This document shows, in pieces, positions 20,146-64,000 of a stretch of DNA of 64,000 nucleotides (positions are counted from its first letter, which is position 1; each line of letters starts with the position of its first letter). The stretch lies in the IMG/VR virus record IMGVR_UViG_3300044701_003953, positions 1-64,000 of that record. One strand, written 5' to 3'. Made by a program: the position numbers and the translations under genes. The notes beneath the pieces are model-generated. The model was given only the letters and a program-made list of their open reading frames with translations. It made no database searches and was not told where the DNA came from.

Positions 20146-23100
20146 TTATCCGCCCAACTTGGCGATATCGCCGGGGTTCTTCAAACGGATTGGAATGTAA
20201 ATGAATTCCACCGCTTTCATTGGCTCGATAGCAATATCGACATAGAGTTCATTGCGTGCAATTCGCTCTGGTGTATTGTTGGTGCTGTCGCAAACAACCA
20301 AGTAGTCATAGATACCACGCTTGGCCACTAAGTCGTTCATAGCGCCTTCAATGATGCTCTTGATTTGATCGCGTGTGATCTTGTCGTTGGGCTCAAACAA
20401 GAATCCGTTGCCTACGCTGGCCAATATCGTACGGATGTAGTTTACTAGACGAGCTACGTTTACGCGATCCATCGCAGATGCGGTTGGGTTTCGTGTCTTC
20501 TGGCCCCAAGCAACTAAACCAACACCGGGCAGGATAGTCAATGGGTTGACACGGTTCTCGTATAACGCATCGCGCATGCCTTGATTGATACCGTTACGGT
20601 TAAATCCGCCAGTCACAGGATTGATGTAACCAATGTCTGTAGCGTTATCAATCAGGCCGCGGCGTGTACCAGCTGGTGCAAACCATGGGTAAGAAACATT
20701 ATCGTTGCGGATGAATGTACGCAGCATCATATGCGATGCTGGGACAACGATAGTGTTGCCGTCTACGTCGTTGGTCAAACCAGCAGGATAGAAAATACCT
20801 AGATAAGGATCTGCTGTCGACAAGCCATCGCCGTTGACGTTGTTAGCCCAATTAGCAACAGCGATCGAATCTGTGGGCAGTGTCATTGGCGTGTCGCCGA
20901 TAACGAATGCTGTATTCTTACGATCGTTGTTGAGTGCAACCATGTTCGTGATTACTTCGGGGTAACCAGGTGCAGCGATCAGGTTGAAGAAGAACTGATC
21001 TTCACGGACTTGTGTGTTTCCGTCAATGGCACTGCGCATAGCTTTAACAACCATGTTGCGCTGTGCTTGTGCGCCCATGTATGGTGCACCATTGTCTTTG
21101 AGACCACTTACTGAGACCCAAGAACTGCGAACATCGGGCAATGTCTCGTTAGGGAAACTATCTTCATTGAAATAGTCACCGACATATTTCTTGACATTGA
21201 ATCCGCTTCGACGTGTGTTAAACAACAATGTTCCTCTGGGGTACAAACGTGGATTTGGTGCATCAAGATCGACATAGTTGCTGATCAGCATCTTGCCAAG
21301 GTCTGGCATTTCTCCAACGATTGGGTCAATCATTCCGCCAACTTGGAGGATCTCGTCGTCTTCACCAAGCTCGGTGTCGGCGTCCCAACGTGCGTCAGCA
21401 AAAATTATTCCGTTTTGGCTGATACGGTCTGTGTTGTCAATTGCTACCCACTTGTTTTGTGTGTTGTAACGATATAACTTGGGATAATTTTCTAGGTCTG
21501 ACGTGTCTAACCAAATATCTCCGGGTCGTAGAACAGAAATGCCATCGTTTTGTGTCTTTGGTTTAGTAGGAGAAATGATTGGGCCATTGGCATCAGTGTT
21601 TGTAAGATCGTATCCGCGGGCATCTGATGCCAGTGTACGATATCCTCTCCAGGCGCTACCATCATTGATCATGATATCGACTTGTGTAGGATCACCAAAG
21701 TACCAGTGTGTTCCATCATTAGGAGACGTGTATGGAGGATCAAAATCAATATCTGTTCGATTACTGATAGTGTCAAGTGCTTGATAAGAACTGATCACAT
21801 ATTCGGTCTCTGTGCTACGAGTATTTTGTTTGCTGAATCCGGCGCTCTCCATTGGAGATCCGGTGATTGTTTCGATCCAGATCGTTCCACCAGATAGGTG
21901 ACCGACGGTCACCGAACCAGTCGAAGAGTCGTATTGAGCAAAGACCTCTGGGGCATTAGCCGTTACGATTGCTCTCACAAAATTCGATTTAAACTCGTCG
22001 CTGGTGTCACCGCTATTAATAGTGATGACACTTGAAACAAATAGCTCGTCTGTACCGGGCTGTGTAGATCTCAGTATGATCGTTCCTCCGGTTAAACCTG
22101 AACCAGATCGTTTACGTGAAGTACGACCTTGCAATGTCTTGTAAAAGATATTGAGTGTGACGCCAGAAGTTAATATTCTATTGTCTCCGTACGATCTACC
22201 GATATTATCGTACTGTACGAATGATGTTCCTAATTGTACTGAGAATCCCCCAGCGATTGGGTCAAATCCATATATGGCACTTTGTTCGCTAGGATATGCC
22301 GGAACGGCTAACAAATTCCATGATGAAGATTCAGCATTGAATTGTTTCAGGGCAAGATTTAAGCCGCCGCCGATAGCCGATGTTTTGATGTAAACGCTAC
22401 CCGACGGTCTAGTTTCAGATGGTAGTATCCAATTTGGAACGTCAATATACGACCCCAGGAATGTTGCTGGGGCACGATACTCGCCGGCAGTAAGACCAAC
22501 GGATGCCAGTCCATTACCTTGGCCGGCTTCTATTTTTACGATGCCATCTTTATTGGCCCCGTCGTTTCCGCTCACTGCGTCTGCAGAGGCAAAAATTTCT
22601 AATTTGTCCCCATTAACGACAGCACGGACACCCGAAGCAAGTGGCGAACCGGGTGTGTATGAACCAAAACGTACTGTAATATCGCTAACTACTGTCTCAA
22701 GAGTATTGCCGGTGAATATAACTTCTTGACCATTGATGATGATTGAGTCATTGGGTTGTATAGTGCTCGACTCGGCAGGAACTGATCCAACTACTGTTGG
22801 CCAATTTTCAATTTGCCAAACAGTGGATCCCACTAGTCTCCAACGATTGCGAGAAGATTTGTGGAAGTATCTAATTTGTTTTTTATCGCAGACTACAGCA
22901 TAATCTCCGATTACACCAACACCATCACTAGGCAAATAAATAGGCACGCCACCAACTGTTATAACAGTAGCGTCGTTTTCTAGGTCAAATATTACTATAG
23001 GCTCTTTTGTAACAAATGCACCCCTTGATTTATCCCACTCATTGATGCCCCAGGCCGAATCACCGAGGTCTAACCATAAAGTAGCATCTTCGGGATCAGC

Positions 23101-23475
23101 TACAGGTCGAACCGAAGTTGGTTCAAGCTCGTCGAGATCAATATCAGCACGGATCGCATAAACGCGATTAGCTATAGCTAATGTGCTGTAGGCCGCCATC
23201 AAACCATATTCATTAAGTGCAGATCCATGCAAAGGAGTACCAGCGGCACTCTGCTTGAACTCAGGGTAACCCAGTGCCGATACTAATTCGCGTTGGCTGG
23301 TAAATACCTGCAATTTTCCAGCATTGGCCTTGGATGTTCCGGTGGCATAACTACCGTTGGATGTTTTGTCTTGTGCGGTAGCCAGGATCACCAATGGGGT
23401 GGATCCTACTGCGCCTGGTACATATTGACTCTCGTCTGTTACTGACAGTTGGAGTCCGGGTGATATCAGTGCCAT
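20146..23475 (-). CDS. gp18: Contractile tail sheath protein (gp18), unusually long (1109 aa)
   Basis: MALISPG, C-terminal WFAPAGTRRG, LYENRVNP, WGQKT, DRVNVARL, CDSTNNTPE, IEPMKAVEFI. Confidence 0.93.
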   Translation of the reverse strand: MALISPGLQLSVTDESQYVPGAVGSTPLVILATAQDKTSNGSYATGTSKANAGKLQVFTSQRELVSALGYPEFKQSAAGTPLHGSALNEYGLMAAYSTLAIANRVYAIRADIDLDELEPTSVRPVADPEDATLWLDLGDSAWGINEWDKSRGAFVTKEPIVIFDLENDATVITVGGVPIYLPSDGVGVIGDYAVVCDKKQIRYFHKSSRNRWRLVGSTVWQIENWPTVVGSVPAESSTIQPNDSIIINGQEVIFTGNTLETVVSDITVRFGSYTPGSPLASGVRAVVNGDKLEIFASADAVSGNDGANKDGIVKIEAGQGNGLASVGLTAGEYRAPATFLGSYIDVPNWILPSETRPSGSVYIKTSAIGGGLNLALKQFNAESSSWNLLAVPAYPSEQSAIYGFDPIAGGFSVQLGTSFVQYDNIGRSYGDNRILTSGVTLNIFYKTLQGRTSRKRSGSGLTGGTIILRSTQPGTDELFVSSVITINSGDTSDEFKSNFVRAIVTANAPEVFAQYDSSTGSVTVGHLSGGTIWIETITGSPMESAGFSKQNTRSTETEYVISSYQALDTISNRTDIDFDPPYTSPNDGTHWYFGDPTQVDIMINDGSAWRGYRTLASDARGYDLTNTDANGPIISPTKPKTQNDGISVLRPGDIWLDTSDLENYPKLYRYNTQNKWVAIDNTDRISQNGIIFADARWDADTELGEDDEILQVGGMIDPIVGEMPDLGKMLISNYVDLDAPNPRLYPRGTLLFNTRRSGFNVKKYVGDYFNEDSFPNETLPDVRSSWVSVSGLKDNGAPYMGAQAQRNMVVKAMRSAIDGNTQVREDQFFFNLIAAPGYPEVITNMVALNNDRKNTAFVIGDTPMTLPTDSIAVANWANNVNGDGLSTADPYLGIFYPAGLTNDVDGNTIVVPASHMMLRTFIRNDNVSYPWFAPAGTRRGLIDNATDIGYINPVTGGFNRNGINQGMRDALYENRVNPLTILPGVGLVAWGQKTRNPTASAMDRVNVARLVNYIRTILASVGNGFLFEPNDKITRDQIKSIIEGAMNDLVAKRGIYDYLVVCDSTNNTPERIARNELYVDIAIEPMKAVEFIYIPIRLKNPGDIAKLGG

Positions 23476-35737: not shown

Positions 35738-38700
35738 TTAAGCCGCGATGTAATCTTGCTTGACTACTACGCTGACTGTTCCCGAAGCGGCTGTGTATTG
35801 TAACAATACATTAGCGCCCGAGATCGTTGCTGTGATAGTTCCCAGCGAACCGTTTGTTGCTACGTTGCCGTATTCAACAAATGTTGCTGTTGTACCGTTA
35901 TGTACTACCAACACTTCGCTGACCTCGTAGTCGCCGCCGGCTGTGGAAGCCTGGACGACATACTTGGCGCTGCGATATGTGGCTTTGGCGAACGAGTCAA
36001 CAGTTGTAGCTGTTGTTGTCGCGCTTGTCGCGGCTGCTGTTGTTACGAAAGCACCGTTGGCAATTACTTTGGTTGTGTTAGCACCACCAGTGTACAGCTC
36101 TAATGCTGTGTCTGTTGGGCGGAACTCAAAGTCACCATTGACGCTGGCAACACCCGAAATCGTGGATGTTGTCTGCAGACGGCGCACATCGATCACATCA
36201 CCGTTCTCAGGGGCTTCTGTGAATGTCAGTGTTGTGCCCGAGATCGAGTAGGACACTGTTGGGATCTGGACCACACCGTTGATTGCTACGATAGCGCCAG
36301 CAGTCGTGATCGAGTCGGCCAGTGTAAAGGCTGTCGTAGATCCGTCACCGTTGAAGCTTTCTGCGGAAATGACTGTGAAATCACCGCCGATGTTTCTCCA
36401 CTGTGTACCTGTGTACAGTTCAGCACTGCCAGTTGTGGAGTTGTAACGAATCATACCAGCTGCGCCAGTTGCGGGACGCTCTGCTGTAGTACCTGCGGGG
36501 ATCATCATAGAGTCTGTGCCAAGTACTGCTAGTTTAGCACCAACTACTAGATCACCGGCTGTACCGTCACCACCAATGATGACTTGGTCGTATGTGGCAT
36601 CAGCAACAGAACGGAACAGACCTGCATCTGTGACACCGCTGTGGATGATGTTGTCACCGGCTGTTTGTGCCGAGTTGACTGTGAGGCTTTCGATATCCAG
36701 GTCTGTGGCAGAAACATCAGCTAATGTAGCAGAACCGCTAGCGTCCAGTGTTGTGAAAGCACCAGTGCTGGCTGTTGTAGCACCAACGGGTGTGCCGTCA
36801 ATAGCACCGCCACTGATCTGTGCGTCGCTGAACGAGCTTGTGCCTGTGGATGTTACATCACCTGTCAAGTCACCAGTTACGTTACCTGTGACATTACCTG
36901 TCAAGTCACCAGTTACATCACCAGTTACATCACCAGTTACATCACCTGTCAAGTCACCAGTTACGTTACCAGTCACGTTACCTGTTACGTTACCTGTCAA
37001 GTCACCAGTTACATCGCCTGTTACGTCACCTGTTACGTCGCCAGTTACATCACCAGTTAAATCACCTGTGAAGCCAGCTGAAGCAGAAACTGTTGTGAAA
37101 GCACCAGTGGATGCTGAGTTCGCGCCGATCGCTGTGCCATCGATGTTACCGCCGTTGATGTCAACGGTAGCAAATGTGGATGTACCAGAACTTGTTACGT
37201 CGCCTGTTAGGTCACCTGTTACGTTACCAGTTACGTTACCAGTTACATTACCTGTCAGGTCGCCAGTTACATTACCTGTCACGTTACCAGTCAAATCGCC
37301 TGTTACGTCACCAGTTAGGTCACCTGTTACGTTACCAGTTACATTACCAGTTAGGTCACCTGTCACGTTACCTGTAACATTACCAGTTACATTACCTGTC
37401 AAGTCACCAGTTACATCGCCTGTTACGTCGCCTGTCAAGTCGCCAGTTACATTACCTGTGACATTACCTGTCAGGTCGCCAGTTACGTTACCTGTTACGT
37501 TACCTGTCAAGTCACCAGTTACATCACCAGTAAATGTGGCGTTTGTACCATCGGTGCCATTTTCAAGGATTTTGCTTGTGCCGTTGCTTGCGTAGATATC
37601 GCCAGTTACGTCACCTGTTACATTACCTGTGACATTACCTGTCAGGTCACCTGTTACATCACCGGTTACATCGCCAGTTAAGTCGCCTGTGACATTACCA
37701 GTTACATTACCTGTTAAGTCGCCTGTGACATTACCAGTTACGTTACCTGTGACATCACCAGTTAGATCGCCTGTGACATCAGCAACGATATCTTTGTTAA
37801 AGTCCCATGTATCAGAAGCACTGTTGTATGTGATTGTTGCGTTAGCGCCATCAACTGTCAGGCCAGCACCGTTAGCGGCTGTAGCATTGGCAGCACCTTT
37901 GGCTACTGTGATGTTAAGGTCAGCGATGTCAACCTGTGTGGAGTTGACTGATGTCACAGTACCTTGTACTGTCAGGTCACCACCAACTACCAGATCGCCA
38001 CCAATGTTGGTGTCGCCACCAATACCAGCACCACCAGCGACCACTAAAGCACCTGTAGAGCTGTCTGTGGAAGCAGTTGTGTCTGTGATCTCAACAGCAA
38101 CAGCGGATGTTGTTAATGTTTCGGCAAATGTTGTTGTCAGTGTACCATCAACTGTGACTTCGATGTCGCCGGCGTTAGTACCATCGTCATTGATGATGAC
38201 GCTTGTGTCGTCTTCGATGATGCGGTCACCACCAGCACTGATCTTGCCGTCAACGTAGGCCTTTGTGGCTGCGTCTGTGTTGTCTGTAGGTGTGCCTACG
38301 TTAGTGATCTTGTTGGCACCAGCATCGATAGTGGAAGTAGCGTCAAATGTTGTGTCGCCCAGTGTAGTAGAAGCAGCGGAAGCATCAACTGTACCAGTGA
38401 ATGTGCTTGTACCAGCGGATGTGATATCGCCAGTTACATCGCCAGTTACATCACCAGTTAGGTCGCCTGTTACGTTACCAGTCACGTTACCTGTCAAATC
38501 GCCGGTTACGTCGCCTGTTAGGTCGCCTGTGATCGTTCCACTTGCTGTGATGTCATTGAATGAGCTTGTGCCGGAACTTGTAACATCACCAGTCAAATCG
38601 CCAGTCACGTTACCTGTAACATTACCAGTTACATTACCTGTCAAGTCACCAGTTACATCGCCTGTTACGTCACCTGTTAAGTCACCTGTGAAACCAGCTG

Positions 38701-39739
38701 AAGCAGAAACTGTTGTGAAAGCACCAGTAGAGGCCGAGTTAGCACCGATTGCTGTGCCGTCAATGTTACCGCCATTGATGTCAACTGTAGCAAATGTCGA
38801 TGTGCCGCTAGATGTGACATCACCTGTCAGGTCGCCAGTCACGTTACCTGTTACATTACCAGTTACGTTACCAGTCAAATCGCCAGTTACATCGCCAGTT
38901 ACGTCACCAGTTACATCACCTGTCAAATCGCCTGTGATCGTACCACTTGCTGTGATATTATTAAATGAGCTTGTACCGGACGAAGTGATATCGCCAGTTA
39001 CATCACCAGTTACATTACCTGTGACATTACCTGTCAAATCGCCTGTTACGTCACCAGTTAGGTCGCCAGTTACATTACCAGTTACATTACCTGTGACATT
39101 ACCTGTCAAGTCGCCTGTTACGTCGCCTGTTAGGTCACCAGTTACATTACCTGTGACATTACCTGTCAAGTCACCAGTCACGTTACCTGTAACATCACCA
39201 GTTAAGTCGCCACTGAAGCCAGTTGCGGCTTGTATTGTTGCGGCGCTAACGTCGCCTGTTGTTGTTAGGTCACCGCCTGTGATGCTCAGTGTACCATCTG
39301 TGAGTTCGTCACCAGTGATTACGCCAGCGACGAAGTCAGCTGTGGCTGTTTCGTTGATAGCACCTGCTGTACCACCAGTTTCTGTAGTCAGGATAGCTTT
39401 AAATGCGTCGTCGGCTTCTACCCAGACCAGGGCAGCGTTGACGTTGCCTACGCCAGAGATGCTGGCTAAGTTTCTGTTTACCAGGATACCAATGTCATAG
39501 CTTGGTGAACCGGTATAACCGTTGTTGAAAATGACCAGTGGGTCATTGATGTATGTGTTCGTGCTCTGTACCGTGCTCGTGTCGCCGCTGACAGACAAGT
39601 TACCAACGATGGTAACATTAGAATTCAGTGTTAGATCAGCGTTAAAAACCGAACCAACGAGTGTACCTGGTTTGATCTTGGTATACTCAATGGTTGAGTC
39701 CGTGATCTGATTATTTTTAATTCGTGTAATGTTAGGCAT
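35738..39739 (-). CDS. Long tail fibre / adhesin (1333 aa) with TG[DN][VL] tetrapeptide repeats
   Basis: Repeat blocks plus ATKAYVD and IPAGTTAERP...IRYN fibre modules; TAAATA at 39772-39777. Confidence 0.8.
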   Translation of the reverse strand: MPNITRIKNNQITDSTIEYTKIKPGTLVGSVFNADLTLNSNVTIVGNLSVSGDTSTVQSTNTYINDPLVIFNNGYTGSPSYDIGILVNRNLASISGVGNVNAALVWVEADDAFKAILTTETGGTAGAINETATADFVAGVITGDELTDGTLSITGGDLTTTGDVSAATIQAATGFSGDLTGDVTGNVTGDLTGNVTGNVTGDLTGDVTGDLTGNVTGNVTGNVTGDLTGDVTGDLTGNVTGNVTGDVTGDITSSGTSSFNNITASGTITGDLTGDVTGDVTGDVTGDLTGNVTGNVTGNVTGDLTGDVTSSGTSTFATVDINGGNIDGTAIGANSASTGAFTTVSASAGFTGDLTGDVTGDVTGDLTGNVTGNVTGNVTGDLTGDVTSSGTSSFNDITASGTITGDLTGDVTGDLTGNVTGNVTGDLTGDVTGDVTGDITSAGTSTFTGTVDASAASTTLGDTTFDATSTIDAGANKITNVGTPTDNTDAATKAYVDGKISAGGDRIIEDDTSVIINDDGTNAGDIEVTVDGTLTTTFAETLTTSAVAVEITDTTASTDSSTGALVVAGGAGIGGDTNIGGDLVVGGDLTVQGTVTSVNSTQVDIADLNITVAKGAANATAANGAGLTVDGANATITYNSASDTWDFNKDIVADVTGDLTGDVTGNVTGNVTGDLTGNVTGNVTGDLTGDVTGDVTGDLTGNVTGNVTGDVTGDIYASNGTSKILENGTDGTNATFTGDVTGDLTGNVTGNVTGDLTGNVTGNVTGDLTGDVTGDVTGDLTGNVTGNVTGNVTGDLTGNVTGNVTGDLTGDVTGDLTGNVTGNVTGDLTGNVTGNVTGNVTGDLTGDVTSSGTSTFATVDINGGNIDGTAIGANSASTGAFTTVSASAGFTGDLTGDVTGDVTGDVTGDVTGDLTGNVTGNVTGNVTGDLTGDVTGDVTGDVTGDLTGNVTGNVTGDLTGDVTSTGTSSFSDAQISGGAIDGTPVGATTASTGAFTTLDASGSATLADVSATDLDIESLTVNSAQTAGDNIIHSGVTDAGLFRSVADATYDQVIIGGDGTAGDLVVGAKLAVLGTDSMMIPAGTTAERPATGAAGMIRYNSTTGSAELYTGTQWRNIGGDFTVISAESFNGDGSTTAFTLADSITTAGAIVAINGVVQIPTVSYSISGTTLTFTEAPENGDVIDVRRLQTTSTISGVASVNGDFEFRPTDTALELYTGGANTTKVIANGAFVTTAAATSATTTATTVDSFAKATYRSAKYVVQASTAGGDYEVSEVLVVHNGTTATFVEYGNVATNGSLGTITATISGANVLLQYTAASGTVSVVVKQDYIAA
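36855..39240 (-). repeat. Degenerate 12-bp coding repeats (TGDV/TGDL/TGNV) in several blocks, with an internal ~130-bp duplicated spacer
   Basis: Runs such as gttacattacctgtgacattacct; duplicated spacer at about 37071-37200 and 38691-38820. Confidence 0.9.
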
Positions 39740-50731: not shown

Positions 50732-52444
50732 TTAAACTCCCGGTGCTGGTGCTGCTGGTGCTGCTGGTGCTGCTGGTGCTGCTTCGGCACCACCAGGTAC
50801 TACAACTTCAGCACCTGCTTCGCCACCTTCAACAGGCGCTGGAGCGAACTGTTCGGTGTCGGATTCGATGCCGCCGGGAGTGATGCCCACGCTTCGCAGG
50901 CCGCCGATATCACCGGTGCTGGATGTGGAGTTTTCGCCATGCTCTTCTTTCCACATGATCTCGTTTTCTGCGATCTCAGCTTCGCTCATGCCCAGATAAC
51001 GCTTCATAAGGAAACGCTTGCTCATGTAAGGAAAGCCTTCTAGCTGTGTGAAAGTAGCGATACGAGCCGCATCAACATCAGCTTGGCGATATTGTGCAAA
51101 GTTCTGTGGCTCTGTGAATACTAGATCAAACAATTGGTTATCGATGTTGATGCCACGCCAACGCATGAACAGTTTAAACTCACGATCCAGTGTGTCAGCG
51201 ATCAGGCTCTGCAAGCGTTTGCAGTATTGATTGAAACGCCATTCTTGTATGAGTGCTGTGCCTACTCGGCCGTCATTGACACTTTGTGTGCCGTCATCCA
51301 TGCCAGTAGGCAAGTAACTGCTAGGAATACGCAGGCCACGGAACAGCTTGTTAGTAAAGAATCGCAGATCGGTGATCTCTCCTAGATTTGAACCGCCTTG
51401 CAATGTATCAACGCTGGACCCACGACCGTCAGCGGTCACTGGGAAGAAAAAGTCTTCGTTAGTGCTGAGTGGGTTATAAGTAGCATCCATAACATTGGCG
51501 CCGCCGCCAGTTTGTGTAGGAATACGGCGCTGGCTGACTTCGTTTTTGATGCGATCAACAAAGGCCATGGCCATATGTGGAGGCATGTTACCCACGTCGA
51601 TCTTGAAGATCCTGCGTTCCGGAGCACGCTGTACACGATAGATAATGATGGAATCTTCAAGCAGTTCTTTTTGCTTGAAAGTTTTAAAAATATTTTCTAA
51701 TACACTGGTACCAAATGGCCAGAAAGCATCTAAACCTTCAGTGAGACTGACATGAACCACATGTTCAGCATTAATGGCCGCTTCGTTCTGCGCATGGCTG
51801 AAACGACTGCCGCCAGTGTAAGGTGTGTTGGGTTGTACATAAGCCGAACCGCCGTGTGTAGGTGACGAACTCATGGCGTCAGTGGCTGCCACGGCTGTTA
51901 CAGTGAGATTCTGGAAATTAGGATTGATGTCTTTGATCACATACTGCTCAAGTTTTTTTCCTTCGGCTTCGTTGACGATAACTTTAGTGACCTTGTTCAT
52001 CTCTACCCAAAACAGTTTGAATGTCTCAGGATCGCGCACAAACACTTGGTCGCCGTACTTGAGGGCATTACGAACCACCTTGAATATGCGCTTGTTGAAG
52101 TCGTTGAGATTGACCCACTGCTGTAGTTGCTCTTTGAGGATCTTGACTTCGTTGTCGGTGGGCGAATCTTTGAAAACTATCTCAAAAGGTGTGTGATTTT
52201 CTTCATTGCGCTGTGTGCAAAATTCGCCCAGGATGTCGAGAGCGGCATTGACTTCTGAGTCCATGTCCATCTGCTCGTATTGGTTGTAGCGATCCAAACG
52301 ATTGGAATGTCCTACATAGACATCGGGCAAAGTGCTGGCCCAGTTACGATAGGAGGCATCGGCAGCGCGGTTCGCGCCCGATATGGGACTTCCGCCAACC
52401 AAAGATGGCACATTTGATGTTTTAAAGTATTTTTTCCAGGACAT
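50732..52444 (-). CDS. gp20: Portal vertex protein (gp20)
   Basis: QKELLEDSIIIYRVQRAPERRIFKIDVGN, EDFFFP, LFRGLRIPSS. Confidence 0.95.
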   Translation of the reverse strand: MSWKKYFKTSNVPSLVGGSPISGANRAADASYRNWASTLPDVYVGHSNRLDRYNQYEQMDMDSEVNAALDILGEFCTQRNEENHTPFEIVFKDSPTDNEVKILKEQLQQWVNLNDFNKRIFKVVRNALKYGDQVFVRDPETFKLFWVEMNKVTKVIVNEAEGKKLEQYVIKDINPNFQNLTVTAVAATDAMSSSPTHGGSAYVQPNTPYTGGSRFSHAQNEAAINAEHVVHVSLTEGLDAFWPFGTSVLENIFKTFKQKELLEDSIIIYRVQRAPERRIFKIDVGNMPPHMAMAFVDRIKNEVSQRRIPTQTGGGANVMDATYNPLSTNEDFFFPVTADGRGSSVDTLQGGSNLGEITDLRFFTNKLFRGLRIPSSYLPTGMDDGTQSVNDGRVGTALIQEWRFNQYCKRLQSLIADTLDREFKLFMRWRGINIDNQLFDLVFTEPQNFAQYRQADVDAARIATFTQLEGFPYMSKRFLMKRYLGMSEAEIAENEIMWKEEHGENSTSSTGDIGGLRSVGITPGGIESDTEQFAPAPVEGGEAGAEVVVPGGAEAAPAAPAAPAAPAPGV

Positions 52445-56672: not shown

Positions 56673-57896
56673 CTATTTGACTGATTGACGGAACTCAGGA
56701 TAAGCGATGAGTCCACACTCTTCCATGTCAGAACCTTCGTGTTCCTCTTTGGGAGAGACACGCAAGCCCATGACAGCTTTGATGATATACCAAACGATCA
56801 AGCTAGTGATGAACACCCAAGCGAAAATCACGGCAGCACCGTAGGCCTGGGTCAGGAACGATCCGGCTTTGTTGGTCAATGGCACTGCTAACAGTCCCCA
56901 TAGTCCAGCTACACCGTGTACTGAGATAGCACCAACTGGGTCGTCGATTTTGAAAATACGATCTAAAGTCAGGATGGATGCGTAGCAGATCAAACCACCG
57001 ATAGCACCGATTGCCGTAGAGGCGATGGCAGTGCCTGTGAGTGGTTCAGCAGTGATTGACACCAATCCAGCCAAAGCACCGTTTAGCGCCATGGTGATAT
57101 CTGACTTGCCTGTAAACAGTTTACCAGCGACTAATGCCGCTAACAAACCACCCACAGCAGCCATGTTGGTGTTGACGAAGATCTGTGCCACAGCGTTGGC
57201 GTCAGCGAACGTGCTCATCTTCAGTTGTGAGCCACCGTTGAAACCAAACCAACCAAACCACAGGATCCATGTGCCCAGGGCCACCAGTGTGATGTTTGAA
57301 CCTTGGATAGCACGTGGCTTACCATTGGGTCCATACTTGCCTTTTCTAGCACCCAGCAGGATCACACCTGCAAGGGCAGCGGCAGCACCGGCCATGTGTA
57401 CCACGCCTGAACCTGCGAAGTCCAGGAAGCCAGCAGCGTCAAGAGCGCCTTTGCCCCACTTCCAGAAACCTTCCACTGGATAGATGAAGCCAGTCATCAC
57501 TACTGCGAACAACAGGAAGCTCCACAGTTTCATGCGCTCGGCCACTGCTCCCGACACGATGCTCATGGCAGTTGCCACGAACACTACCTGAAACCAGAAG
57601 TCCGACAGTTTGCTGTAGTAAGCGTCGGCAGCGGGTTTGGCATGATCGCCTGCGACCAGGAAATCAAAGCCCGGGATCCACGAACCTTTGGCTCCGCCGT
57701 ACATGATGTTGTAGCCTACGAGTAGGAACATCAAACAAGCGATGCCGTAGAGCGCAAAGTTTTTAGTGATGATCTCTGAGACGTTCTTGGTGCGGACCAT
57801 ACCTGCTTCCAGCATGGTGAAACCTGCGCCCATGAACATGACCATGGCGCCCATGACTAGGAAGTAAAACGTATCTAAGCTATATGCTAGTTCCAT
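56673..57896 (-). CDS. amtB: Ammonium transporter (Amt family)
   Basis: AGFTMLEAG, DFAGSGVVH and ISVHGVAG (twin His), WFGWFGFNGGS, NGALAGLVSIT, IDDPVGA; start trimmed to MELAYSLDT. Confidence 0.93.
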   Translation of the reverse strand: MELAYSLDTFYFLVMGAMVMFMGAGFTMLEAGMVRTKNVSEIITKNFALYGIACLMFLLVGYNIMYGGAKGSWIPGFDFLVAGDHAKPAADAYYSKLSDFWFQVVFVATAMSIVSGAVAERMKLWSFLLFAVVMTGFIYPVEGFWKWGKGALDAAGFLDFAGSGVVHMAGAAAALAGVILLGARKGKYGPNGKPRAIQGSNITLVALGTWILWFGWFGFNGGSQLKMSTFADANAVAQIFVNTNMAAVGGLLAALVAGKLFTGKSDITMALNGALAGLVSITAEPLTGTAIASTAIGAIGGLICYASILTLDRIFKIDDPVGAISVHGVAGLWGLLAVPLTNKAGSFLTQAYGAAVIFAWVFITSLIVWYIIKAVMGLRVSPKEEHEGSDMEECGLIAYPEFRQSVK

Positions 57897-57897
57897 T

Positions 57898-58939
<1,042 letters not shown>

Positions 58940-59096
58940 AGTTGAATTACCTTTCTGCTGATACTCTTGATCAGCGTTGATGTCCAGGGTACTCCTGACC
59001 CTTGACACTAATATATATATAGCAGAGCACAATATCAGTGTGTGTTTTGTAGTATTTTTGTCATGGACATATAGATTTATGTCGTTAGCGACGGAC

Positions 59097-59126
59097 AATA
59101 AAAAACCGCTGCCAAAGACAGCGGTT
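59097..59126 (-). terminator. Terminator after the 64-aa gene
   Basis: Minus aaccgctg-tctttgg-cagcggtt followed by a T tract. Confidence 0.75.
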
Positions 59127-59146: not shown

Positions 59147-59341
59147 TTACTTCTTAGCGTCAGCTTTCTTTTCAGACTTAGCGTCAGCTTTCTTTTCAGA
59201 CTTAGCGTCAGCTTTCTTTTCTTCTTTTTTGGCTTCTGCTTTAGCAGGAGCGGCAGCAGGAGCTGCGGGTGCTTTGGCCGCATCGGCAGCAAACACCGAT
59301 GTAGCAATACCCATCATCAGGGCGGCAACTACGTTTTTCAT
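59147..59341 (-). CDS. Small secreted Lys/Ala-rich protein (acid-shock-protein-like)
   Basis: Signal peptide MKNVVAALMMGIATSVFA; KKADAKSE repeats. Confidence 0.7.
   Translation of the reverse strand: MKNVVAALMMGIATSVFAADAAKAPAAPAAAPAKAEAKKEEKKADAKSEKKADAKSEKKADAKK
59153..59221. repeat. 24-bp tandem repeat, about 2.9 copies
   Basis: cttagcgtcagctttcttttcaga repeated exactly. Confidence 0.9.
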
Positions 59342-60525: not shown

Positions 60526-61365
60526 TCACGACTGGGCAGATCCATTTGTATCGTTGCTGGTCGATCTTGGGGATTTGTAAGGCTTACTGCTACTAGTATC
60601 AGTGTCCACATCGTCGTGCTCTTTGGTCCAGGTCACTATCTCCCAGCGACCGTCGTAGTGTTCGACAAGGGCAGTCATTGATTCCACCCAATCTCCATCG
60701 TTCATGTATGTGACGCCGTCTATTTCTTTGATCTCAGCGTGATGTATGTGTCCGCAGATAACACCATCAAAGCCACGCTTCTTACAGTATGCGGCAAGGT
60801 TCTTTTCAAATTGAAATATGAAGTCTATGGCTTTTTTCACACGTCCTTTGAGATACTTACTCAACGACCAATAACCAAATCCCATGCGATGTCGTATCCA
60901 ATTAAACTTGCTGTTTAACATCAACACAAAGTCATAGGCCTTGTCGCCTAAAAAGCTGATCCATGGGGCTAGTCTAGTGATACCATCGAAGAGATCACCG
61001 TGTGTGACTAGATAGTGCCGTCCATCTACACCTATGTGTTCGCACTGATTGACCACTTCAATATTGCCAAAGTTGATGCCGTAGGGCATGAGCGGTCTAA
61101 GGAATTCGTCATGATTACCAGCCACATATATGACTCGTGTGCCACGCTTGGCATGACCCATGACACGTCGTACTACATTGGTATGGCTTTGTTTCCAACG
61201 CCATTTGTTTTGCTGTATCCTCCAAGCATCAATGATATCTCCTACTAGGTAAAGCGTTTCACAGGTATGATGTTTGAGGAAGTTGTTTAATTGATTGGCT
61301 TTACAGTCCCGCGTACCAAGATGCACATCAGATATGAATATAGATCTGTAAGTTTGTTGCGGCAT
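60526..61365 (-). CDS. plcP: PlcP-type Mn-dependent metallophosphoesterase (LpxH-like phospholipase C)
   Basis: FISDVHLG, LVGDIID, GNHDE, HGDLFD, YWSLS, CGHIHH, NDGDWVES. Confidence 0.8.
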   Translation of the reverse strand: MPQQTYRSIFISDVHLGTRDCKANQLNNFLKHHTCETLYLVGDIIDAWRIQQNKWRWKQSHTNVVRRVMGHAKRGTRVIYVAGNHDEFLRPLMPYGINFGNIEVVNQCEHIGVDGRHYLVTHGDLFDGITRLAPWISFLGDKAYDFVLMLNSKFNWIRHRMGFGYWSLSKYLKGRVKKAIDFIFQFEKNLAAYCKKRGFDGVICGHIHHAEIKEIDGVTYMNDGDWVESMTALVEHYDGRWEIVTWTKEHDDVDTDTSSSKPYKSPRSTSNDTNGSAQS

Positions 61366-61419
61366 AACAAATATTTACTCTTTCTGCTTTGCGACAAATA
61401 ACTTACTATGACCGTTTCA

Positions 61420-61917
61420 TTACAAGATCCGCATATGCGGATCTATCGCTTTCGCTATTCGCTCAGCGATGTTTTTTCTAAATTAGAACTATTGTTTGTT
61501 TTTAAGTATCATCCAGATTAAGCAGCCACACTTCGCCCCTTGCGGGGCGAAAAAGGTTTTACTAGCATCATCCGAGTAGCACAACCACTTAGCGTTGGAA
61601 CTATGATTGACTATATTTTAATATAAACAATCGCGCAGGCGGTCATCCGGTACCTGCTCATCCCGTCTTCCTATGACGGCGGGGTCTACGACATACGCTA
61701 ACACATCGCAGAGCCGTGTGAGTATCGTTGTAATCTCACATCTTTTAGCCTTGATAAAAGAACATTTGTCTTACAGCGAAACCAGTTGATAAAGGCATAT
61801 CTGGTCATCGTCCTGTCAAGGATAGTCGCTGTATGCTCGCGGCGGCGGCGAGACTTCGGTCCCCGTGATCCAAAGATCCGGTTATCGTCGGCACCCGATG
61901 TTGGCCGGTGCTAGCCT
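61420..61917 (-). ncRNA. Candidate large structured non-coding RNA downstream of the GIY-YIG gene
   Basis: About 500 nt with no ORF of 60 aa or more, at least 8 local hairpins, long-range complementarities and a GCAA tetraloop. Confidence 0.55.
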
Positions 61918-62367
61918 TTACTCGCTGATGATATTTTTAAGTTTGCCCTTGATGTGGGAGCCATGTACACGGACTTGTATGTGTCCGTTATAGTATTCGT
62001 TGGATTCTAAGACTTGGTGTCGGAATTGTTCTCTTGCTTCGATGTAACTGCATTCGGCCTTGCTGTAACAGTAATAGAGTATCTCCCTGGTAAAGTTTTC
62101 GGGACCTAGCGTTTCTACATCTCGGTTTAGTTCGTCGTTTGAGCCATAATAAGTCTGCCAGTCTGAATCGATTTTTGATTTGATGCGTTTTTTCTTTTTA
62201 GTGCCATTCTTCAGTTTAACAGTTCGATAAGTGGTTTTTGAGAATTTTGCCAGTTTTTTGCCTATGTATTTCCTACCTGATACTCGATTCGTGATGAGAT
62301 AGACGAAGCCTACACAATCGTCGGGCAAAGATTCTACGGGTGAGTTCTCGAAAAGCCACATGGACAT
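61918..62367 (-). CDS. Single-domain GIY-YIG endonuclease (Seg-like)
   Basis: GFVYLITN...KYIGKK, YYGS, conserved E (YIEAREQ) and YYN. Confidence 0.8.
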   Translation of the reverse strand: MSMWLFENSPVESLPDDCVGFVYLITNRVSGRKYIGKKLAKFSKTTYRTVKLKNGTKKKKRIKSKIDSDWQTYYGSNDELNRDVETLGPENFTREILYYCYSKAECSYIEAREQFRHQVLESNEYYNGHIQVRVHGSHIKGKLKNIISE

Positions 62368-62391
62368 CCATAGTTATCGTTTTATCGTTGA

Positions 62392-62862
62392 TCATAGATT
62401 TTTTTCGTAGATCCAGCCAAGATGTTCGGTTTCGTGTATCCAGGTGTAGATGGGAAACGTCACGGGCAACACCCATTCTCCGTTCCAACCTAGGTAATCA
62501 CCGCGGATCGCGGGTTCTAACACTATGCCTTGCTGTTCGCAGGTTCTGCGATATGCTTCAGGATAACGCGGATAGTATAAGGCCTGCTGACGGAAACTGT
62601 CAAAATTCATGCCTTCGAACCCGATACCTTCTATGATCACGGCCTTGTCGAGATCCTGTTCGACTACTGTATCGCCGTCCCTTTTGTTGTAGAACTCCAC
62701 GACCAAGAGATGGTCTCCATGTCCTCCGGAGACATCAAAAGTCTTGACGTGGTGATGATCGAGCTCGCCGCGGAACAATACTTGATCGTCCCAACGGATT
62801 TCGATCTCGGGATAGTCGTCCCACCATACGGGTTTTAGAGTGATATCAATGACGGTATCCAT
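62392..62862 (-). CDS. Hypothetical protein coupled to a radical SAM gene
   Basis: Overlaps the radical SAM stop by 17 nt. Confidence 0.65.
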   Translation of the reverse strand: MDTVIDITLKPVWWDDYPEIEIRWDDQVLFRGELDHHHVKTFDVSGGHGDHLLVVEFYNKRDGDTVVEQDLDKAVIIEGIGFEGMNFDSFRQQALYYPRYPEAYRRTCEQQGIVLEPAIRGDYLGWNGEWVLPVTFPIYTWIHETEHLGWIYEKNL

Positions 62863-64000
62863 ATATCCTTAACCAATCTGTTGCTTCAGGTAAAAAATCT
62901 TCGACGGTCTTGTCGTGGAGCTCATCCTGCTCGCTGAGCCTAGCAGCCATATCTCGGCGTAGTTCATCGGCTCCTGCCGGTTCAGGTCTCCGCAAGTGTC
63001 GTATCAACGCTTCTGCTTCGTTCTTTAATGTGATCTCGACGTTGTTGGGATTCTTGGTATTGTTGAATCTTTCACCTTGTATCTGTATGCTGTCTGCGAA
63101 ATCCTGTAAGTGCTGTATAGTATATGCTTTGAGATCCTCGGGCAAGAGATCTGACAACATCCATCTTGGACGATTTGGGTAGCTGGCATCGATGGGGATA
63201 CGACGATCCAGGGCGTGTTTCAGTAGCGTGTGGTATCTTAATACTGATAATGCTGTAGGTACTGTACGGAAAGTCCATTGTACTTCTGGCATAGCATCTC
63301 TCATATCATCCACATTACGCAGGATCTGTGTGATGTCTGCGCCTTGCCGCAGATAATCGTTGGCACGGTCTGCTGTTTCGATGCTGACGCCAATCTCTAC
63401 TCGTTTGAAGATACGCAAGAGATCATGATATTTTGAGTAGTTGATACTACCGTTGGTAGTGAACGACAAGTTTAACCAAGTCATCTTTTTGTCGGCAAAC
63501 ATCTTCAGCAGATCTCGGAAACGCTCAATGAGTTCAGGTTCTCCGCCGATGATGTGTACTACACGAACCGACTCGTAATTTACATCGAACCAGTCAACGA
63601 AACGCTGCCAAGCCACCGGATCCTGCGTCCATGGCTCTAACTTGTAGTCGATAGGAATCCATCCCATCTTCCGTTGATCTTGTGCCACACGGCTAGATGC
63701 TTCGGGCGGACAAAACTTACAGCTGAAATTACAAGTGGTACCGATGTTGAGATGTAGGCTGGCTATGCGGGTAACAGTCTCTCCGTCGTTGTTGGCGCTG
63801 TAATCAAAATACCCTTTGTGCGGACTCTGCTCAAAACTACGGTCAAACTGTCGCTGGAAGATCACCGACTTGAGATTTTCTTTCTGTCTCGCAGATGTAT
63901 AACCGGCAGCATCTTTCATCTGGCACATGCGGCACATAGGATCCACGGTATCACCTAATTTGATCCTGCGCTTTTCCCGCATGCGACTGCTGTTCCAATA
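62846..64000 (-). CDS. Radical SAM protein, 5'-truncated by the window edge
   Basis: CNFSCKFC, IIGGEP, FTTNG; the frame is open to position 64000. Confidence 0.85.
   Translation of the reverse strand, partial: YWNSSRMREKRRIKLGDTVDPMCRMCQMKDAAGYTSARQKENLKSVIFQRQFDRSFEQSPHKGYFDYSANNDGETVTRIASLHLNIGTTCNFSCKFCPPEASSRVAQDQRKMGWIPIDYKLEPWTQDPVAWQRFVDWFDVNYESVRVVHIIGGEPELIERFRDLLKMFADKKMTWLNLSFTTNGSINYSKYHDLLRIFKRVEIGVSIETADRANDYLRQGADITQILRNVDDMRDAMPEVQWTFRTVPTALSVLRYHTLLKHALDRRIPIDASYPNRPRWMLSDLLPEDLKAYTIQHLQDFADSIQIQGERFNNTKNPNNVEITLKNEAEALIRHLRRPEPAGADELRRDMAARLSEQDELHDKTVEDFLPEATDWLRIYGYRH

What the first reader, a model, noticed from the sequence alone, without database searches (positions are those of the whole stretch)
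61420..62367. Minimal GIY-YIG nuclease followed immediately by a ~500-nt highly structured RNA: candidate nuclease-RNA system
Seen: directly after the stop of a 149-aa GIY-YIG protein that lacks the long DNA-recognition tail of homing endonucleases, an ORF-free region folds on the minus strand into many helices: CACC/GGTG, GATC-TTTG-GATC, CTCGC/GCGAG, TCCT-TGAC-AGGA, GTGAG/CTCAC, CCGTC/GACGG, GCAGG/CCTGC with inner CGG/CCG, and TTCGCCCC-GCAA-GGGGCGAA (61532-61551). There is a long-range TTAGCGT/ACGCTAA pair (61695-61701 with 61589-61595), repeated GGATGA motifs, and a 20-bp perfect palindrome (61425-61444). CAGCGACTATCC (~61821-61832) and AAAATATAGTC (~61609-61619) resemble the group I intron P7 strands, but no interrupted gene or clear P/Q elements are visible. 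Inference: a large ncRNA/RNP partner of the nuclease (RNA-guided or RNA-regulated, by analogy with OMEGA/HEARO), a group-I-derived ribozyme, or a structured replication origin.
Basis: partly seen in the sequence, partly recalled or inferred. Interest (0 to 1): 0.8.

Follow-up and report, generated by a model that had tools for sequence, protein, structure and literature searches.

The report
Phage nuclease gene with large RNA
The gene-free stretch after a small phage nuclease gene encodes a roughly 495-base, highly folded RNA whose first third is a catalogued RNA family of unknown function, and comparison with about 150 relatives shows two short exposed segments that are always identical to each other while changing between phages.

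Summary
Window 61420-61923 (minus strand) is the gene of a roughly 495-nt structured RNA. It starts at the stop codon of a 149-aa SegE-type GIY-YIG gene (61918-62367) in a 207-kb T4-like freshwater phage contig.

Its first 141 nt are Rfam RF01718, the Polynucleobacter-1 RNA (102.5 bits against a threshold of 37). Weinberg et al. (2010) described this motif and noted that it lies downstream of one gene family. So the core of the finding is already known.

Several things appear to be new:
- The upstream gene is a catalytically intact GIY-YIG nuclease.
- The RNA is phage-borne.
- The conserved part is the middle and 3' two-thirds, which Rfam does not model. It has about 15 covarying helices and three pseudoknots.
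- It carries two homologous modules with exposed 7-nt cores that are identical in 138 of 139 relatives, despite at least 50 inferred changes.

Group I intron, tRNA/tmRNA, HEARO and replication-origin readings are not supported.

Gene and RNA travel as a pair in about 98% of loci, but each also occurs without the other. I favour a separable, trans-acting phage RNA next to a Seg-like nuclease gene (0.4) over an RNA-guided nuclease (0.25). No transcript data could be obtained.

The parts
61918..62367 (-). 149-aa SegE-type GIY-YIG nuclease gene, catalytic domain only
   Evidence: Pfam PF19835, E 1.7e-33, residues 4-130. PHROG 447, E 8.8e-38, full length. Y23, Y34-I35-G36, R94, E110 and N127 are invariant in 21 homologues, including cyanophage and Melnitz proteins. 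AF2 model has pLDDT 88 and shows a Lys-rich beta-hairpin at residues 41-67.
61420..61923 (-). Full structured RNA, about 495-500 nt. Its conserved 5' sequence overlaps the last two codons and the stop codon of the nuclease gene.
   Evidence: Conservation extends about 500 nt downstream of the gene in relatives. The motif CAGU-UAA-G before P1 is kept even where a different ORF precedes the RNA. Strand is fixed by the G-U/A-C asymmetry.
61771..61916 (-). 5' domain, equal to Rfam RF01718 (Polynucleobacter-1 RNA). It contains PK0 (61913-61916 with 61903-61906), P1 (61907-61911/61891-61895), P2 (61863-61881), P3 (61836-61852), P4 (61826-61831/61774-61779), P4a (61811-61822) and P5 (61780-61806).
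   Evidence: 102.5 bits against a gathering score of 37, model positions 1-141 of 141. P1 is 100% canonical and P4 99.8% canonical, with 64 and 94 compensatory cells.
61589..61739 (-). Middle domain. It contains P6 (61718-61739), P7 (61682-61715), pseudoknot PK1 (61695-61701 with 61589-61595), pseudoknot PK2 (61672-61676 with 61643-61647), the P9 stack (61660-61664/61597-61601, 61653-61657/61636-61639) and the most conserved block, GGUACCGGAYRACCGCC (61636-61652).
   Evidence: APC-corrected mutual information and pair counts on 88 sequences. The conserved block was used as a search pattern and returned 114 true RNAs among 119 viral loci.
61602..61635 (-). Optional AT-rich insertion. Some relatives have a longer version with TTATAG repeats; most relatives lack it.
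Evidence: Alignment A1.
61566..61588 (-). Twin module 1: GUGRY-UG-NNN-A-CUC-[core]-G. The core GGAUGAU lies at 61567-61573.
61531..61553 (-). P10 hairpin (8 bp, GNRA-type loop) between the two modules
   Evidence: 97% canonical with compensatory changes.
61507..61532 (-). Twin module 2: GUGUGRC-YR-NNN-A-UCU-[core]-A. The core GGAUGAU lies at 61508-61514 and is identical to the core of module 1.
   Evidence: The four variable core positions are identical in 88 of 88 sequences, with at least 21, 4, 11 and 15 changes on the tree. 11 of 11 independent pairs changed the same way. Cores are identical in 138 of 139 RNAs across two 5'-domain classes.
61445..61506 (-). Variable A-rich linker (61471-61506) followed by the P11 hairpin (61445-61470). 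P11 is a covarying 6-bp stem enclosing GAGCG-NNA-GCGAA.
   Evidence: Alignments. The linker ranges from 0 to about 70 nt in relatives.
61420..61444 (-). Terminal hairpin P12 (the 20-bp palindrome at 61425-61444) plus a short U-rich tail. This is the probable 3' end and terminator.
   Evidence: All 8 pairs covary, with 160 compensatory cells. In many relatives a convergent gene ends right after this hairpin. The consensus terminator scan did not call it, because the U tail is weak.
62391..62420 (-). Weak sigma-70-like promoter match just upstream of the nuclease start codon. It could drive a joint gene-plus-RNA transcript.
   Evidence: 9 of 12 hexamer matches; not enriched over shuffles. This is a lead only.

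Best explanation
Shown. The stretch is the gene of a roughly 495-nt, multi-pseudoknotted phage ncRNA. Its 5' third is the Rfam family Polynucleobacter-1. It lies on the same strand as a SegE-type GIY-YIG gene, starts at that gene's stop codon with no room for a promoter in between, and ends at a covarying hairpin. The part conserved across the wider RNA family is the middle and 3' two-thirds. The 5' domain is exchangeable, with at least three versions. The 3' domain holds two homologous modules, each presenting a single-stranded 7-nt core in a constant frame (A-CUC-core-G and A-UCU-core-A). The two cores are always identical to each other while differing between phages.

Inferred. The RNA is made as the 3' continuation of the nuclease mRNA. 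It is a separable, trans-acting stable RNA that uses its twin cores to bind two copies, or two symmetric halves, of one partner nucleic acid that has not been identified. The nuclease gene is a linked companion rather than an obligatory user of the RNA. I read it as a Seg-like gene sitting beside a stable-RNA gene, as T4 segB sits among tRNA genes and as the cyanophage homologue sits before tRNA-Arg.
For: Identity of the RNA:
- RF01718 match at 102.5 bits.
- The 2010 description places the motif downstream of gene family GOS11034.

Structure:
- 97 consensus pairs, 94% canonical, 53 with compensatory changes.
- Pseudoknots PK0, PK1 and PK2 are supported by mutual information.
- G-U 762 cells against A-C 114 cells in helices.

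Phage origin:
- Tail sheath, portal and baseplate genes in the window.
- The window is IMG/VR contig 3300044701_003953, 207.5 kb.

The pair behaves as a module amid variable neighbours:
- The gene lies just upstream of the RNA (next ORF, or one ORF further) in 136 of 148 unique loci.
- The commonest next neighbour on either side reaches only 20-28%.

Separability:
- L168 has the RNA at 96.8 bits with no nuclease gene in 7.5 kb upstream, in a different gene context.
- L325 and L327 have twin-module RNAs without the gene. In L327 the RNA follows a terminator-like hairpin with a U run.
- 1-kb or 0.2-kb ORFs are inserted between gene and RNA in about 7% of loci.
- L046, L075, Melnitz-3 and S-SRM01 have the gene without the RNA.

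The same slot holds another stable RNA in relatives:
- S-RIM2 and P-RSM4 homologues are followed about 150 nt later by tRNA-Arg(AGA).
- 60 RNA-bearing loci contain no tRNA gene.

Twin cores:
-.
- A different core, AGCGAAA, appears in both modules of a distant subfamily.
Against: - No transcript evidence.
- No partner for the twin cores was found, whether in the RNA, in 4-7 kb flanks, or in the 64-kb window.
- The tight abutment of RNA and stop codon in over 90% of loci, and the near-universal pairing within this clade, fit a functional partnership at least as well.
- The nuclease lacks the DNA-binding domain of true Seg homing enzymes and is unusually well conserved (68-84% identity). Both facts sit badly with a selfish homing gene.
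- RNA-only loci are few. Their genomes could encode the nuclease elsewhere, since only 10 kb or less was seen.
Confidence: 0.4

Rival explanations
1. Nuclease-RNA particle. The RNA scaffolds one or two copies of the domain-only GIY-YIG enzyme. Its twin 7-nt cores, extendable to about 12 nt with the constant frame, supply the missing DNA recognition, for example on the two strands of an inverted-repeat target. Alternatively the RNA gates the enzyme's activity.
For: - The enzyme has no DNA-binding tail but keeps all catalytic residues and has a Lys-rich beta-hairpin.
- The RNA overlaps the ORF end, as TnpB guide RNAs do.
- Two-way linkage of about 98% within the clade, as a module among variable neighbours.
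- The twin cores behave like programmable specificity segments: at least 50 inferred parallel changes, and a completely different core in another subfamily.
- L324 shows that a 60%-identical nuclease still carries an RNA with a different core.
Against: - RNA without the gene and gene without the RNA both exist.
- About 680 isolated-phage homologues of the same short architecture were found. The two checked with the RNA models (Melnitz-3, S-SRM01) lack the RNA, the two cyanophage loci inspected show a tRNA gene instead, and a DNA search of the collection found no match.
- No complementary target was found nearby or in the 64-kb window.
- Core type shows no co-variation with nuclease residues above phylogenetic background.
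- Cores are short and come in only about 10 types, unlike known guides.
Confidence: 0.25
2. Translation- or tRNA-directed RNA. The twin cores imitate message triplets. In the window's clade they read as an A-ending sense codon (GGA, AGA, GCA, GAA) followed by UGA or UAA. They would bind two identical host or phage tRNAs or a translation factor, in the genomic slot where related phages carry tRNA-Arg(AGA).
For: - Core types in 139 RNAs follow NNA-URA with one exception, and never contain UAG.
- Cyanophage homologues are followed by tRNA-Arg(AGA).
- RNA-bearing loci lack tRNA genes.
Against: - The pattern does not generalise. The distant subfamily has AGCGAAA in both modules.
- There is no tRNA-like or tmRNA-like element.
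- There is no evidence of any tRNA contact.
Confidence: 0.08
3. Cis-acting 3' untranslated region. The structure only stabilises the nuclease mRNA or controls nuclease translation.
For: - It starts at the stop codon and ends at a terminator-like hairpin.
- The 2010 authors scored the motif as possibly cis-regulatory.
Against: - About 500 nt with three pseudoknots and many invariant junction nucleotides is far more than stabilisation needs.
- The RNA persists after other genes (L017, L062, L018) and without the nuclease gene (L168, L327).
Confidence: 0.08
4. Group I-derived ribozyme or self-splicing element carrying the GIY-YIG gene as its homing gene.
For: GIY-YIG genes often sit in phage group I introns. 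NCBIfam gives a weak hit to the group I intron endonuclease family (E 0.0027, below the cut-off).
Against: - No group I hit even at E<=10.
- The flanking ORFs are complete, separate genes, and the downstream gene differs between relatives.
- The proposed P7 strands do not pair in the covariation-supported structure.
Confidence: 0.02
5. DNA-level element, such as a replication origin or protein-binding iterons, with the two repeats acting as binding sites.
For: - Two direct repeats plus an AT-rich insertion with TTATAG repeats in some relatives.
- Both strands fold better than shuffles.
Against: - Compensatory changes maintain base pairs.
- G-U pairs outnumber A-C about 7 to 1, so selection acts on one RNA strand.
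- The AT-rich insertion is optional.
Confidence: 0.03

Closest known systems
Polynucleobacter-1 RNA motif (Rfam RF01718; Weinberg et al. 2010, PMC2864571)
   Same: Window 61771-61916 matches the full 141-position model at 102.5 bits. Like the published examples, it lies directly downstream of one conserved gene family in freshwater sequence data. The original alignment already carried a 3' 'tail' with extra stems and a pseudoknot.
   Different: - The Rfam model covers only the 5' third.
- Here the RNA sits in a phage genome, whereas the authors found none in sequenced phages.
- The upstream gene is identified here as a GIY-YIG nuclease.
- The 5' domain is replaceable. Class B and the AGCGAAA subfamily do not hit RF01718, while the middle and 3' domains are shared.
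HEARO / OMEGA guide RNAs with IscB or TnpB nucleases
   Same: A structured, pseudoknotted RNA abuts or overlaps a nuclease ORF. It was first catalogued in the same 2010 survey as an RNA tied to a nuclease-like gene. It contains lineage-variable single-stranded segments.
   Different: - The nuclease is GIY-YIG, not RuvC or HNH.
- The variable segments are internal, only 7 nt (12 at most), and present twice, rather than one terminal guide of 16 nt or more.
- No transposon ends and no matching target were found.
- RNA and gene are separable.
T4 segB within the tRNA gene cluster; cyanophage GIY-YIG ('T4-like GC 213') followed by tRNA-Arg
   Same: A Seg-family GIY-YIG gene lies immediately upstream of, and on the same strand as, a stable-RNA gene in a T4-like phage. 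The segB case is from my own knowledge of the T4 literature, not a tool result.
   Different: - The RNA here is a 495-nt non-tRNA.
- The nuclease lacks the C-terminal DNA-binding domain of SegB.
- No homing or cleavage data exist.
I-TevI / Seg catalytic domain (GIY-YIG superfamily)
   Same: The GIY and YIG strands, Arg, Glu and Asn are all invariant. Pfam SegE_GIY-YIG match.
   Different: - There is no linker or DNA-binding domain.
- A 27-residue Lys-rich beta-hairpin is inserted after the YIG strand.
- No significant sequence or Foldseek match to any solved structure.

Membership tests
Rfam RF01718 Polynucleobacter-1 RNA | Covariance-model score at or above the curated gathering score, over the whole model | tested here: met
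   102.5 bits against 37, model positions 1-141 of 141, E 5e-21.
Rfam RF01718 Polynucleobacter-1 RNA | Model helices kept by compensatory changes in relatives | tested here: met
   P1 100%, P3 98%, P4 98-99.8% and P5 98% canonical, each with compensatory changes, across 88 sequences.
Rfam RF01718 Polynucleobacter-1 RNA | Location downstream of a gene of family GOS11034 (possible homologue of P-SSM2 locus 218) | not testable with these tools
   The upstream gene is one conserved family (136 of 148 loci) and has cyanophage homologues.
GIY-YIG nuclease superfamily, SegE-like | Profile match to the GIY-YIG catalytic domain | tested here: met
   PF19835, E 1.7e-33, 115.9 bits against a cut-off of 25.
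GIY-YIG nuclease superfamily, SegE-like | Catalytic residues (Tyr of GIY, Tyr-x-Gly of YIG, Arg, Glu, Asn) | tested here: met
   Y23, Y34-I35-G36, R94, E110 and N127 are invariant in 21 homologues. The assignment of roles by analogy with I-TevI comes from memory.
GIY-YIG nuclease superfamily, SegE-like | Fold similarity to a solved GIY-YIG domain | tested here: inconclusive
   The AF2 model (pLDDT 88) has the expected order of strands and helices. Foldseek against PDB gives no match below E 0.16.
Seg / I-TevI type homing endonucleases | C-terminal DNA-binding domain joined by a linker | tested here: not met
   The protein is 149 aa and the catalytic domain ends at residue 130. No second Pfam, PHROG or NCBIfam domain was found.
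Group I intron | Match to the group I covariance model; conserved P3-P7 core | tested here: not met
   No hit at E<=10 in 61300-62450. The proposed P7 strands belong to P4 and to an optional insertion.
Group I intron | Interrupts a host gene whose exons rejoin | tested here: not met
   The flanking ORFs are complete and unrelated. The downstream gene differs among relatives and is often convergent.
OMEGA/HEARO-type RNA-guided nuclease systems | Structured RNA encoded next to or overlapping the nuclease ORF | tested here: met
   The conserved RNA 5' end overlaps the last codons and the stop codon.
OMEGA/HEARO-type RNA-guided nuclease systems | A variable guide segment complementary to a target | tested here: inconclusive
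   Twin variable 7-nt cores exist. No complementary site was found in the RNA, the flanks or the 64-kb window.
OMEGA/HEARO-type RNA-guided nuclease systems | RNA and nuclease co-occur obligatorily | tested here: not met
   RNA-only loci: L168, L325, L327. Gene-only loci: L046, L075, Melnitz-3, S-SRM01.
OMEGA/HEARO-type RNA-guided nuclease systems | RNA-dependent, reprogrammable cleavage | not testable with these tools
   This needs biochemistry.
tRNA / tmRNA | Cloverleaf or tRNA-like domain with a tag reading frame | tested here: not met
   ARAGORN finds none in the window or in 60 related loci. No Rfam tRNA or tmRNA hit.
Intrinsic terminator (for the 61425-61444 hairpin) | G+C-rich hairpin followed by a U run | tested here: inconclusive
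   The hairpin covaries at all 8 pairs, and relatives mostly have UUU(A) after it. In the window the tail is UUGUAAU, and the scan did not call it.

The most novel reading that the evidence does not exclude
The RNA is a programmable twin-guide scaffold for the domain-only GIY-YIG enzyme. Two pseudo-symmetric modules each hold one nuclease monomer and pair a 7-12-nt core with the two halves of a target. This would be the first RNA-guided nuclease of the GIY-YIG class, with a two-seed recognition logic unlike Cas9, Cas12, IscB or TnpB.
Probability: 0.15. Interest if true: 0.95.

Novelty: new member of a known kind. Interest (0 to 1): 0.6.

Why it matters
Polynucleobacter-1 has been an orphan RNA motif since 2010. 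This window and its relatives give it a concrete setting. It belongs to T4-like freshwater phages. It rides behind a catalytically intact GIY-YIG nuclease gene. It is three times longer than the catalogued model.

It also carries two exposed segments that are kept identical through dozens of changes. That is the signature of a sequence-specific contact with an unknown partner. This turns a catalogue entry into testable questions:
- What do the twin segments bind?
- Does the nuclease need the RNA?

HEARO came from the same survey and later proved to be the guide RNA of IscB. That history makes the nuclease-partner possibility worth a direct experiment, even though present evidence leans against an obligatory partnership.

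Tried and rejected
- **Group I intron, HEARO, ROOL, GOLLD, RAGATH, tmRNA.** No Rfam hit even at E<=10 in 61300-62450. The only other matches are chance-level.
- **tRNA/tmRNA.** None in the window or in 60 related loci.
- **Isolated phages.** No DNA match. The protein matches 679 records, all below 60% identity. The two tested with the RNA models (Melnitz-3, S-SRM01) have no RNA.
- **Genome-contig scan.** The 17-nt RNA pattern returned mostly chance hits in high-G+C genomes. Only two short metagenome-bin contigs were genuine.
- **Intramolecular partner for the twin cores.** None found; 0 of 88 RNAs contain the exact complement.
- **Partner in flanking DNA.** The phage's own core or its complement is not enriched over other core types in 689 kb of flanks. 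In the 64-kb window only the gene's own two sites match.
- **Pairing of repeat 1 with repeat 2.** It is 92% canonical but has no compensatory changes, and the parallel substitutions break it.
- **Co-variation of core type with nuclease residues.** Not above phylogenetic background.
- **'Sense codon plus stop codon' reading of the cores.** Fits the window's clade but fails in the AGCGAAA subfamily.
- **Solved-structure relatives of the nuclease.** None by sequence or by profile, and none by Foldseek.
- **Covariance models.** I did not build any and did not run the count of structure pairs. Pair statistics come from my own scripts on the tool-made alignment A1.
Full report
**What is there**

The window is part of a large T4-like myophage. 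It has a tail sheath (20146-23475), a portal (50732-52444) and a baseplate hub (35738-39739), and nearly all genes are on the minus strand. It is identical to IMG/VR contig 3300044701_003953, which is 207,520 bp long.

The ORF at 61918-62367 (-) encodes 149 aa. It matches Pfam SegE_GIY-YIG over residues 4-130 (E 1.7e-33) and PHROG 447 end to end. Between its stop codon and the next gene (60526-61365, an LpxH-like metallophosphoesterase) lie 552 bases. No ORF there exceeds 38 aa.

**It is a catalogued RNA, but only in part**

Rfam places RF01718, the Polynucleobacter-1 RNA, at 61771-61916 (-). The score is 102.5 bits against a gathering score of 37, and all 141 model positions are matched. No other family matches, not even at E<=10. 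That excludes group I introns, HEARO, ROOL, GOLLD and tmRNA. ARAGORN finds nothing.

Weinberg et al. (2010; PMC2864571, supplement) described this motif from 16 freshwater sequences and one Polynucleobacter genome. [quoted passage not shown] They also noted that no copy was found in a sequenced phage. Their alignment carried a 3' "tail" with extra stems. So the RNA-gene association is not new. Its phage setting and the nature of the gene appear to be new. The paper library holds no other paper that names the motif, and I found none linking a GIY-YIG enzyme to a partner RNA.

**Extent and structure**

More than 587 relatives of the nuclease exist in IMG/VR. The best 80 are 68-84% identical. In these, about 500 nt downstream of the gene are conserved in three blocks.

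I aligned 88 non-redundant full-length RNAs (A1). RNAalifold gives 97 consensus pairs. These are 94% canonical, and 53 of them show compensatory changes. APC-corrected mutual information recovers the same helices and adds three pseudoknots:
- PK0: the 5' tail GGCU pairs with the P1 loop.
- PK1: 61695-61701 pairs with 61589-61595. All seven pairs covary and 97% of cells are canonical.
- PK2: GUYRU pairs with the loop of the invariant CCGGAYRACCG hairpin.

G-U cells outnumber A-C cells 762 to 114, so the RNA is read from the nuclease's sense strand. Folding energy alone cannot tell the strands apart, with z-scores of -4.0 and -4.8.

The RNA ends at a hairpin in which all eight pairs covary. This hairpin is the window's 20-bp palindrome at 61425-61444. 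In many relatives a convergent gene stops right after it.

The conserved 5' sequence (CAGU-UAA-G) overlaps the last codons and the stop codon of the nuclease gene. It is retained even where another small ORF precedes the RNA. This leaves no room for a separate promoter, so I infer co-transcription.

**Linkage**

Gene-first search: nearly every homologue with enough downstream DNA has all three RNA blocks on the same strand. The exceptions are L046 and L075. In about 7% of loci an ORF sits between gene and RNA. These are either 329-342 aa of unknown function or a 72-aa ORF with a QSregVF_b match.

RNA-first search: I scanned for the most conserved block, GGTACCGGAYRACCGCC. Of 119 viral loci, 114 are true RNAs. 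Among these:
- 103 have the gene upstream,
- 9 lack upstream DNA,
- 2 (L137, L168) have upstream DNA but no gene.

The pair is the stable unit in a fluid neighbourhood. The nuclease gene lies just upstream of the RNA (next ORF, or one ORF further) in 136 of 148 unique loci. In contrast, the commonest second-upstream and downstream genes reach only 28% and 20%. Those neighbours include Hc1-like, radical SAM, gp46/gp47-like, a baseplate protein and DUF6614.

**Separability**

L168 has a full class-A RNA (RF01718 at 96.8 bits) in a different gene context and without the nuclease gene.

A pattern taken from the 2010 seed sequences found four more loci. L324 has a 60%-identical nuclease gene plus the RNA. 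L325 and L327 have twin-module RNAs with no nuclease gene within the 8.5 kb and 4.8 kb upstream that were available. L326 had only about 80 nt upstream of its RNA and is uninformative. In L327 the RNA follows a terminator-like hairpin with a U run, which suggests its own transcription unit.

Among isolated phages the nuclease has 679 homologues, all below 60% identity. Melnitz-3 (49.6%) and S-SRM01 have no RNA after the gene. In cyanophages S-RIM2 and P-RSM4 the homologue is followed about 150 nt later by tRNA-Arg(AGA) on the same strand. Sixty RNA-bearing loci contain no tRNA gene.

Only class-A 5' domains hit RF01718. Class B (for example L005 and L018) and the L324, L325 and L327 RNAs do not, yet class B and L324 share the middle and 3' domains. 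The family-defining part is therefore the two-thirds that Rfam does not model.

**The twin segments**

This is the most informative new feature. The 3' domain contains two homologous modules on either side of the P10 hairpin:
- ...AAGUGRC-UG-NNN-A-CUC-[7 nt]-G
- ...AAGUGUGRC-YR-NNN-A-UCU-[7 nt]-A

The strongest non-Watson-Crick covariation signals in the whole RNA link equivalent positions of the two 7-nt cores.

The four variable core positions are identical in 88 of 88 sequences. On a tree built without those columns they change at least 21, 4, 11 and 15 times. 11 of 11 phylogenetically independent contrasts go the same way. Across both 5'-domain classes, 138 of 139 RNAs have identical cores, and the single exception is probably a pattern mis-hit. 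There are about 10 core types. GGAUAAU, GGAUGAA, GGAUGAU (the window's type) and AGAUAAU are the commonest. In the Polynucleobacter-type subfamily both cores are AGCGAAA, which differs at 5 of 7 positions but sits in the same constant frame.

Such concerted identity implies that both segments contact the same kind of partner in a sequence-specific way. I could not find that partner:
- No complement exists inside the RNA.
- There is no enrichment in 689 kb of flanking DNA.
- The 64-kb window holds no site other than the gene's own two.
- Nuclease residues do not co-vary with core type above background.
- Pairing between the two repeats is possible, but the parallel changes break it.

In the window's clade the cores read as an A-ending codon followed by UGA or UAA. 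That reading fails for AGCGAAA.

**The nuclease**

The GIY and YIG strands, R94, E110 and N127 are invariant, even in cyanophage and Melnitz homologues. The AF2 model (pLDDT 88) shows the expected strand and helix order, plus a 27-residue Lys-rich beta-hairpin inserted after the YIG strand. No solved structure matches by sequence, profile or Foldseek. There is no DNA-binding tail.

**Interpretation**

Shown:
- A roughly 495-nt structured phage RNA.
- Its 5' third is RF01718.
- It is tied to a catalytically intact, domain-only GIY-YIG gene.
- It has a modular 5' domain.
- It has twin identical specificity-like segments.

Inferred: I favour, at 0.4, a separable trans-acting stable RNA. It would be co-transcribed with the nuclease gene in this clade and would occupy the slot where related phages carry a tRNA. 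The nuclease would be a linked Seg-like companion.

The nuclease-RNA particle (0.25) remains a serious rival. In its favour:
- the abutment of RNA and gene,
- their behaviour as a module,
- the missing DNA-binding domain,
- the guide-like twin cores.

Against it:
- RNA-only and gene-only loci exist,
- no target was found.

A tRNA- or translation-directed role, a mere 3' UTR, a group I derivative and a DNA-level origin are each less likely. The reasons are given under the rival explanations.

**Verdict**

The central object is an already catalogued RNA family whose function is still unknown. The group I and origin ideas fail. The nuclease-partner idea is untested and somewhat weakened. The extended architecture and the twin co-changing segments are new, concrete handles for experiments.

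Noticed in passing
window 56673-58236 (-) and 58247-59098 (-): The phage carries an ammonium transporter (Pfam Ammonium_transp, E 1e-100) directly followed by a P-II nitrogen regulator (E 2e-31), then a Gcw_chp outer-membrane beta-barrel-like protein (E 6e-49). This looks like a host-type amtB-glnK nitrogen-uptake cassette used as auxiliary metabolic genes.
   Followed up: partly
window 59147-59341 (-): A 64-aa ORF with a signal-like N-terminus and tandem KKADAKSE repeats. It has no Pfam match. Relatives often carry an Hc1 histone-like gene just upstream of the nuclease gene.
   Followed up: no
window 62846-63982 (-) and 62392-62862 (-): Upstream of the nuclease gene lies a twitch-domain radical SAM protein (NCBIfam NF033640, E 3e-55) and a 156-aa ORF with no family match. 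The 156-aa ORF ends 25 nt before the nuclease start codon.
   Followed up: partly
window 61602-61635; L024, L043, L068, L089 (same RNA position): An optional AT-rich insertion lies between P9b and the 3' strand of P9. In some relatives it expands to three or four TTATAG(T/A) repeats, and it goes with an AUGAGYAGG variant of the adjacent stem. Its function is unknown.
   Followed up: no
L018:4434-5447, L029, L053 (between the nuclease gene and the RNA): A 329-342-aa ORF with no Pfam or PHROG match is inserted between the GIY-YIG gene and class-B RNAs. L017 and L062 instead have a 72-aa ORF with a QSregVF_b match.
   Followed up: partly
L005, L013, L038 and others (class B); L324, L325, L327: At least two further 5' domains replace the Polynucleobacter-1 motif in front of the shared middle and 3' domains or twin modules. 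None of them is in Rfam.
   Followed up: partly
A1 columns 99 and 111 (window about 61822 and 61810): Strong non-Watson-Crick covariation (U/C swapping with C/U) flanks the P4a hairpin: ACUAUCC...GGACGA versus ACUACCC...GGAUGA. This suggests a register shift or a tertiary contact.
   Followed up: no
L302 and L314 (genome contigs): The only genuine hits in bacterial 'genomes' are 1.5-1.7-kb contigs in Flavobacteriales and Bacteroidetes metagenome bins. They are most likely phage fragments that were mis-binned.
   Followed up: no
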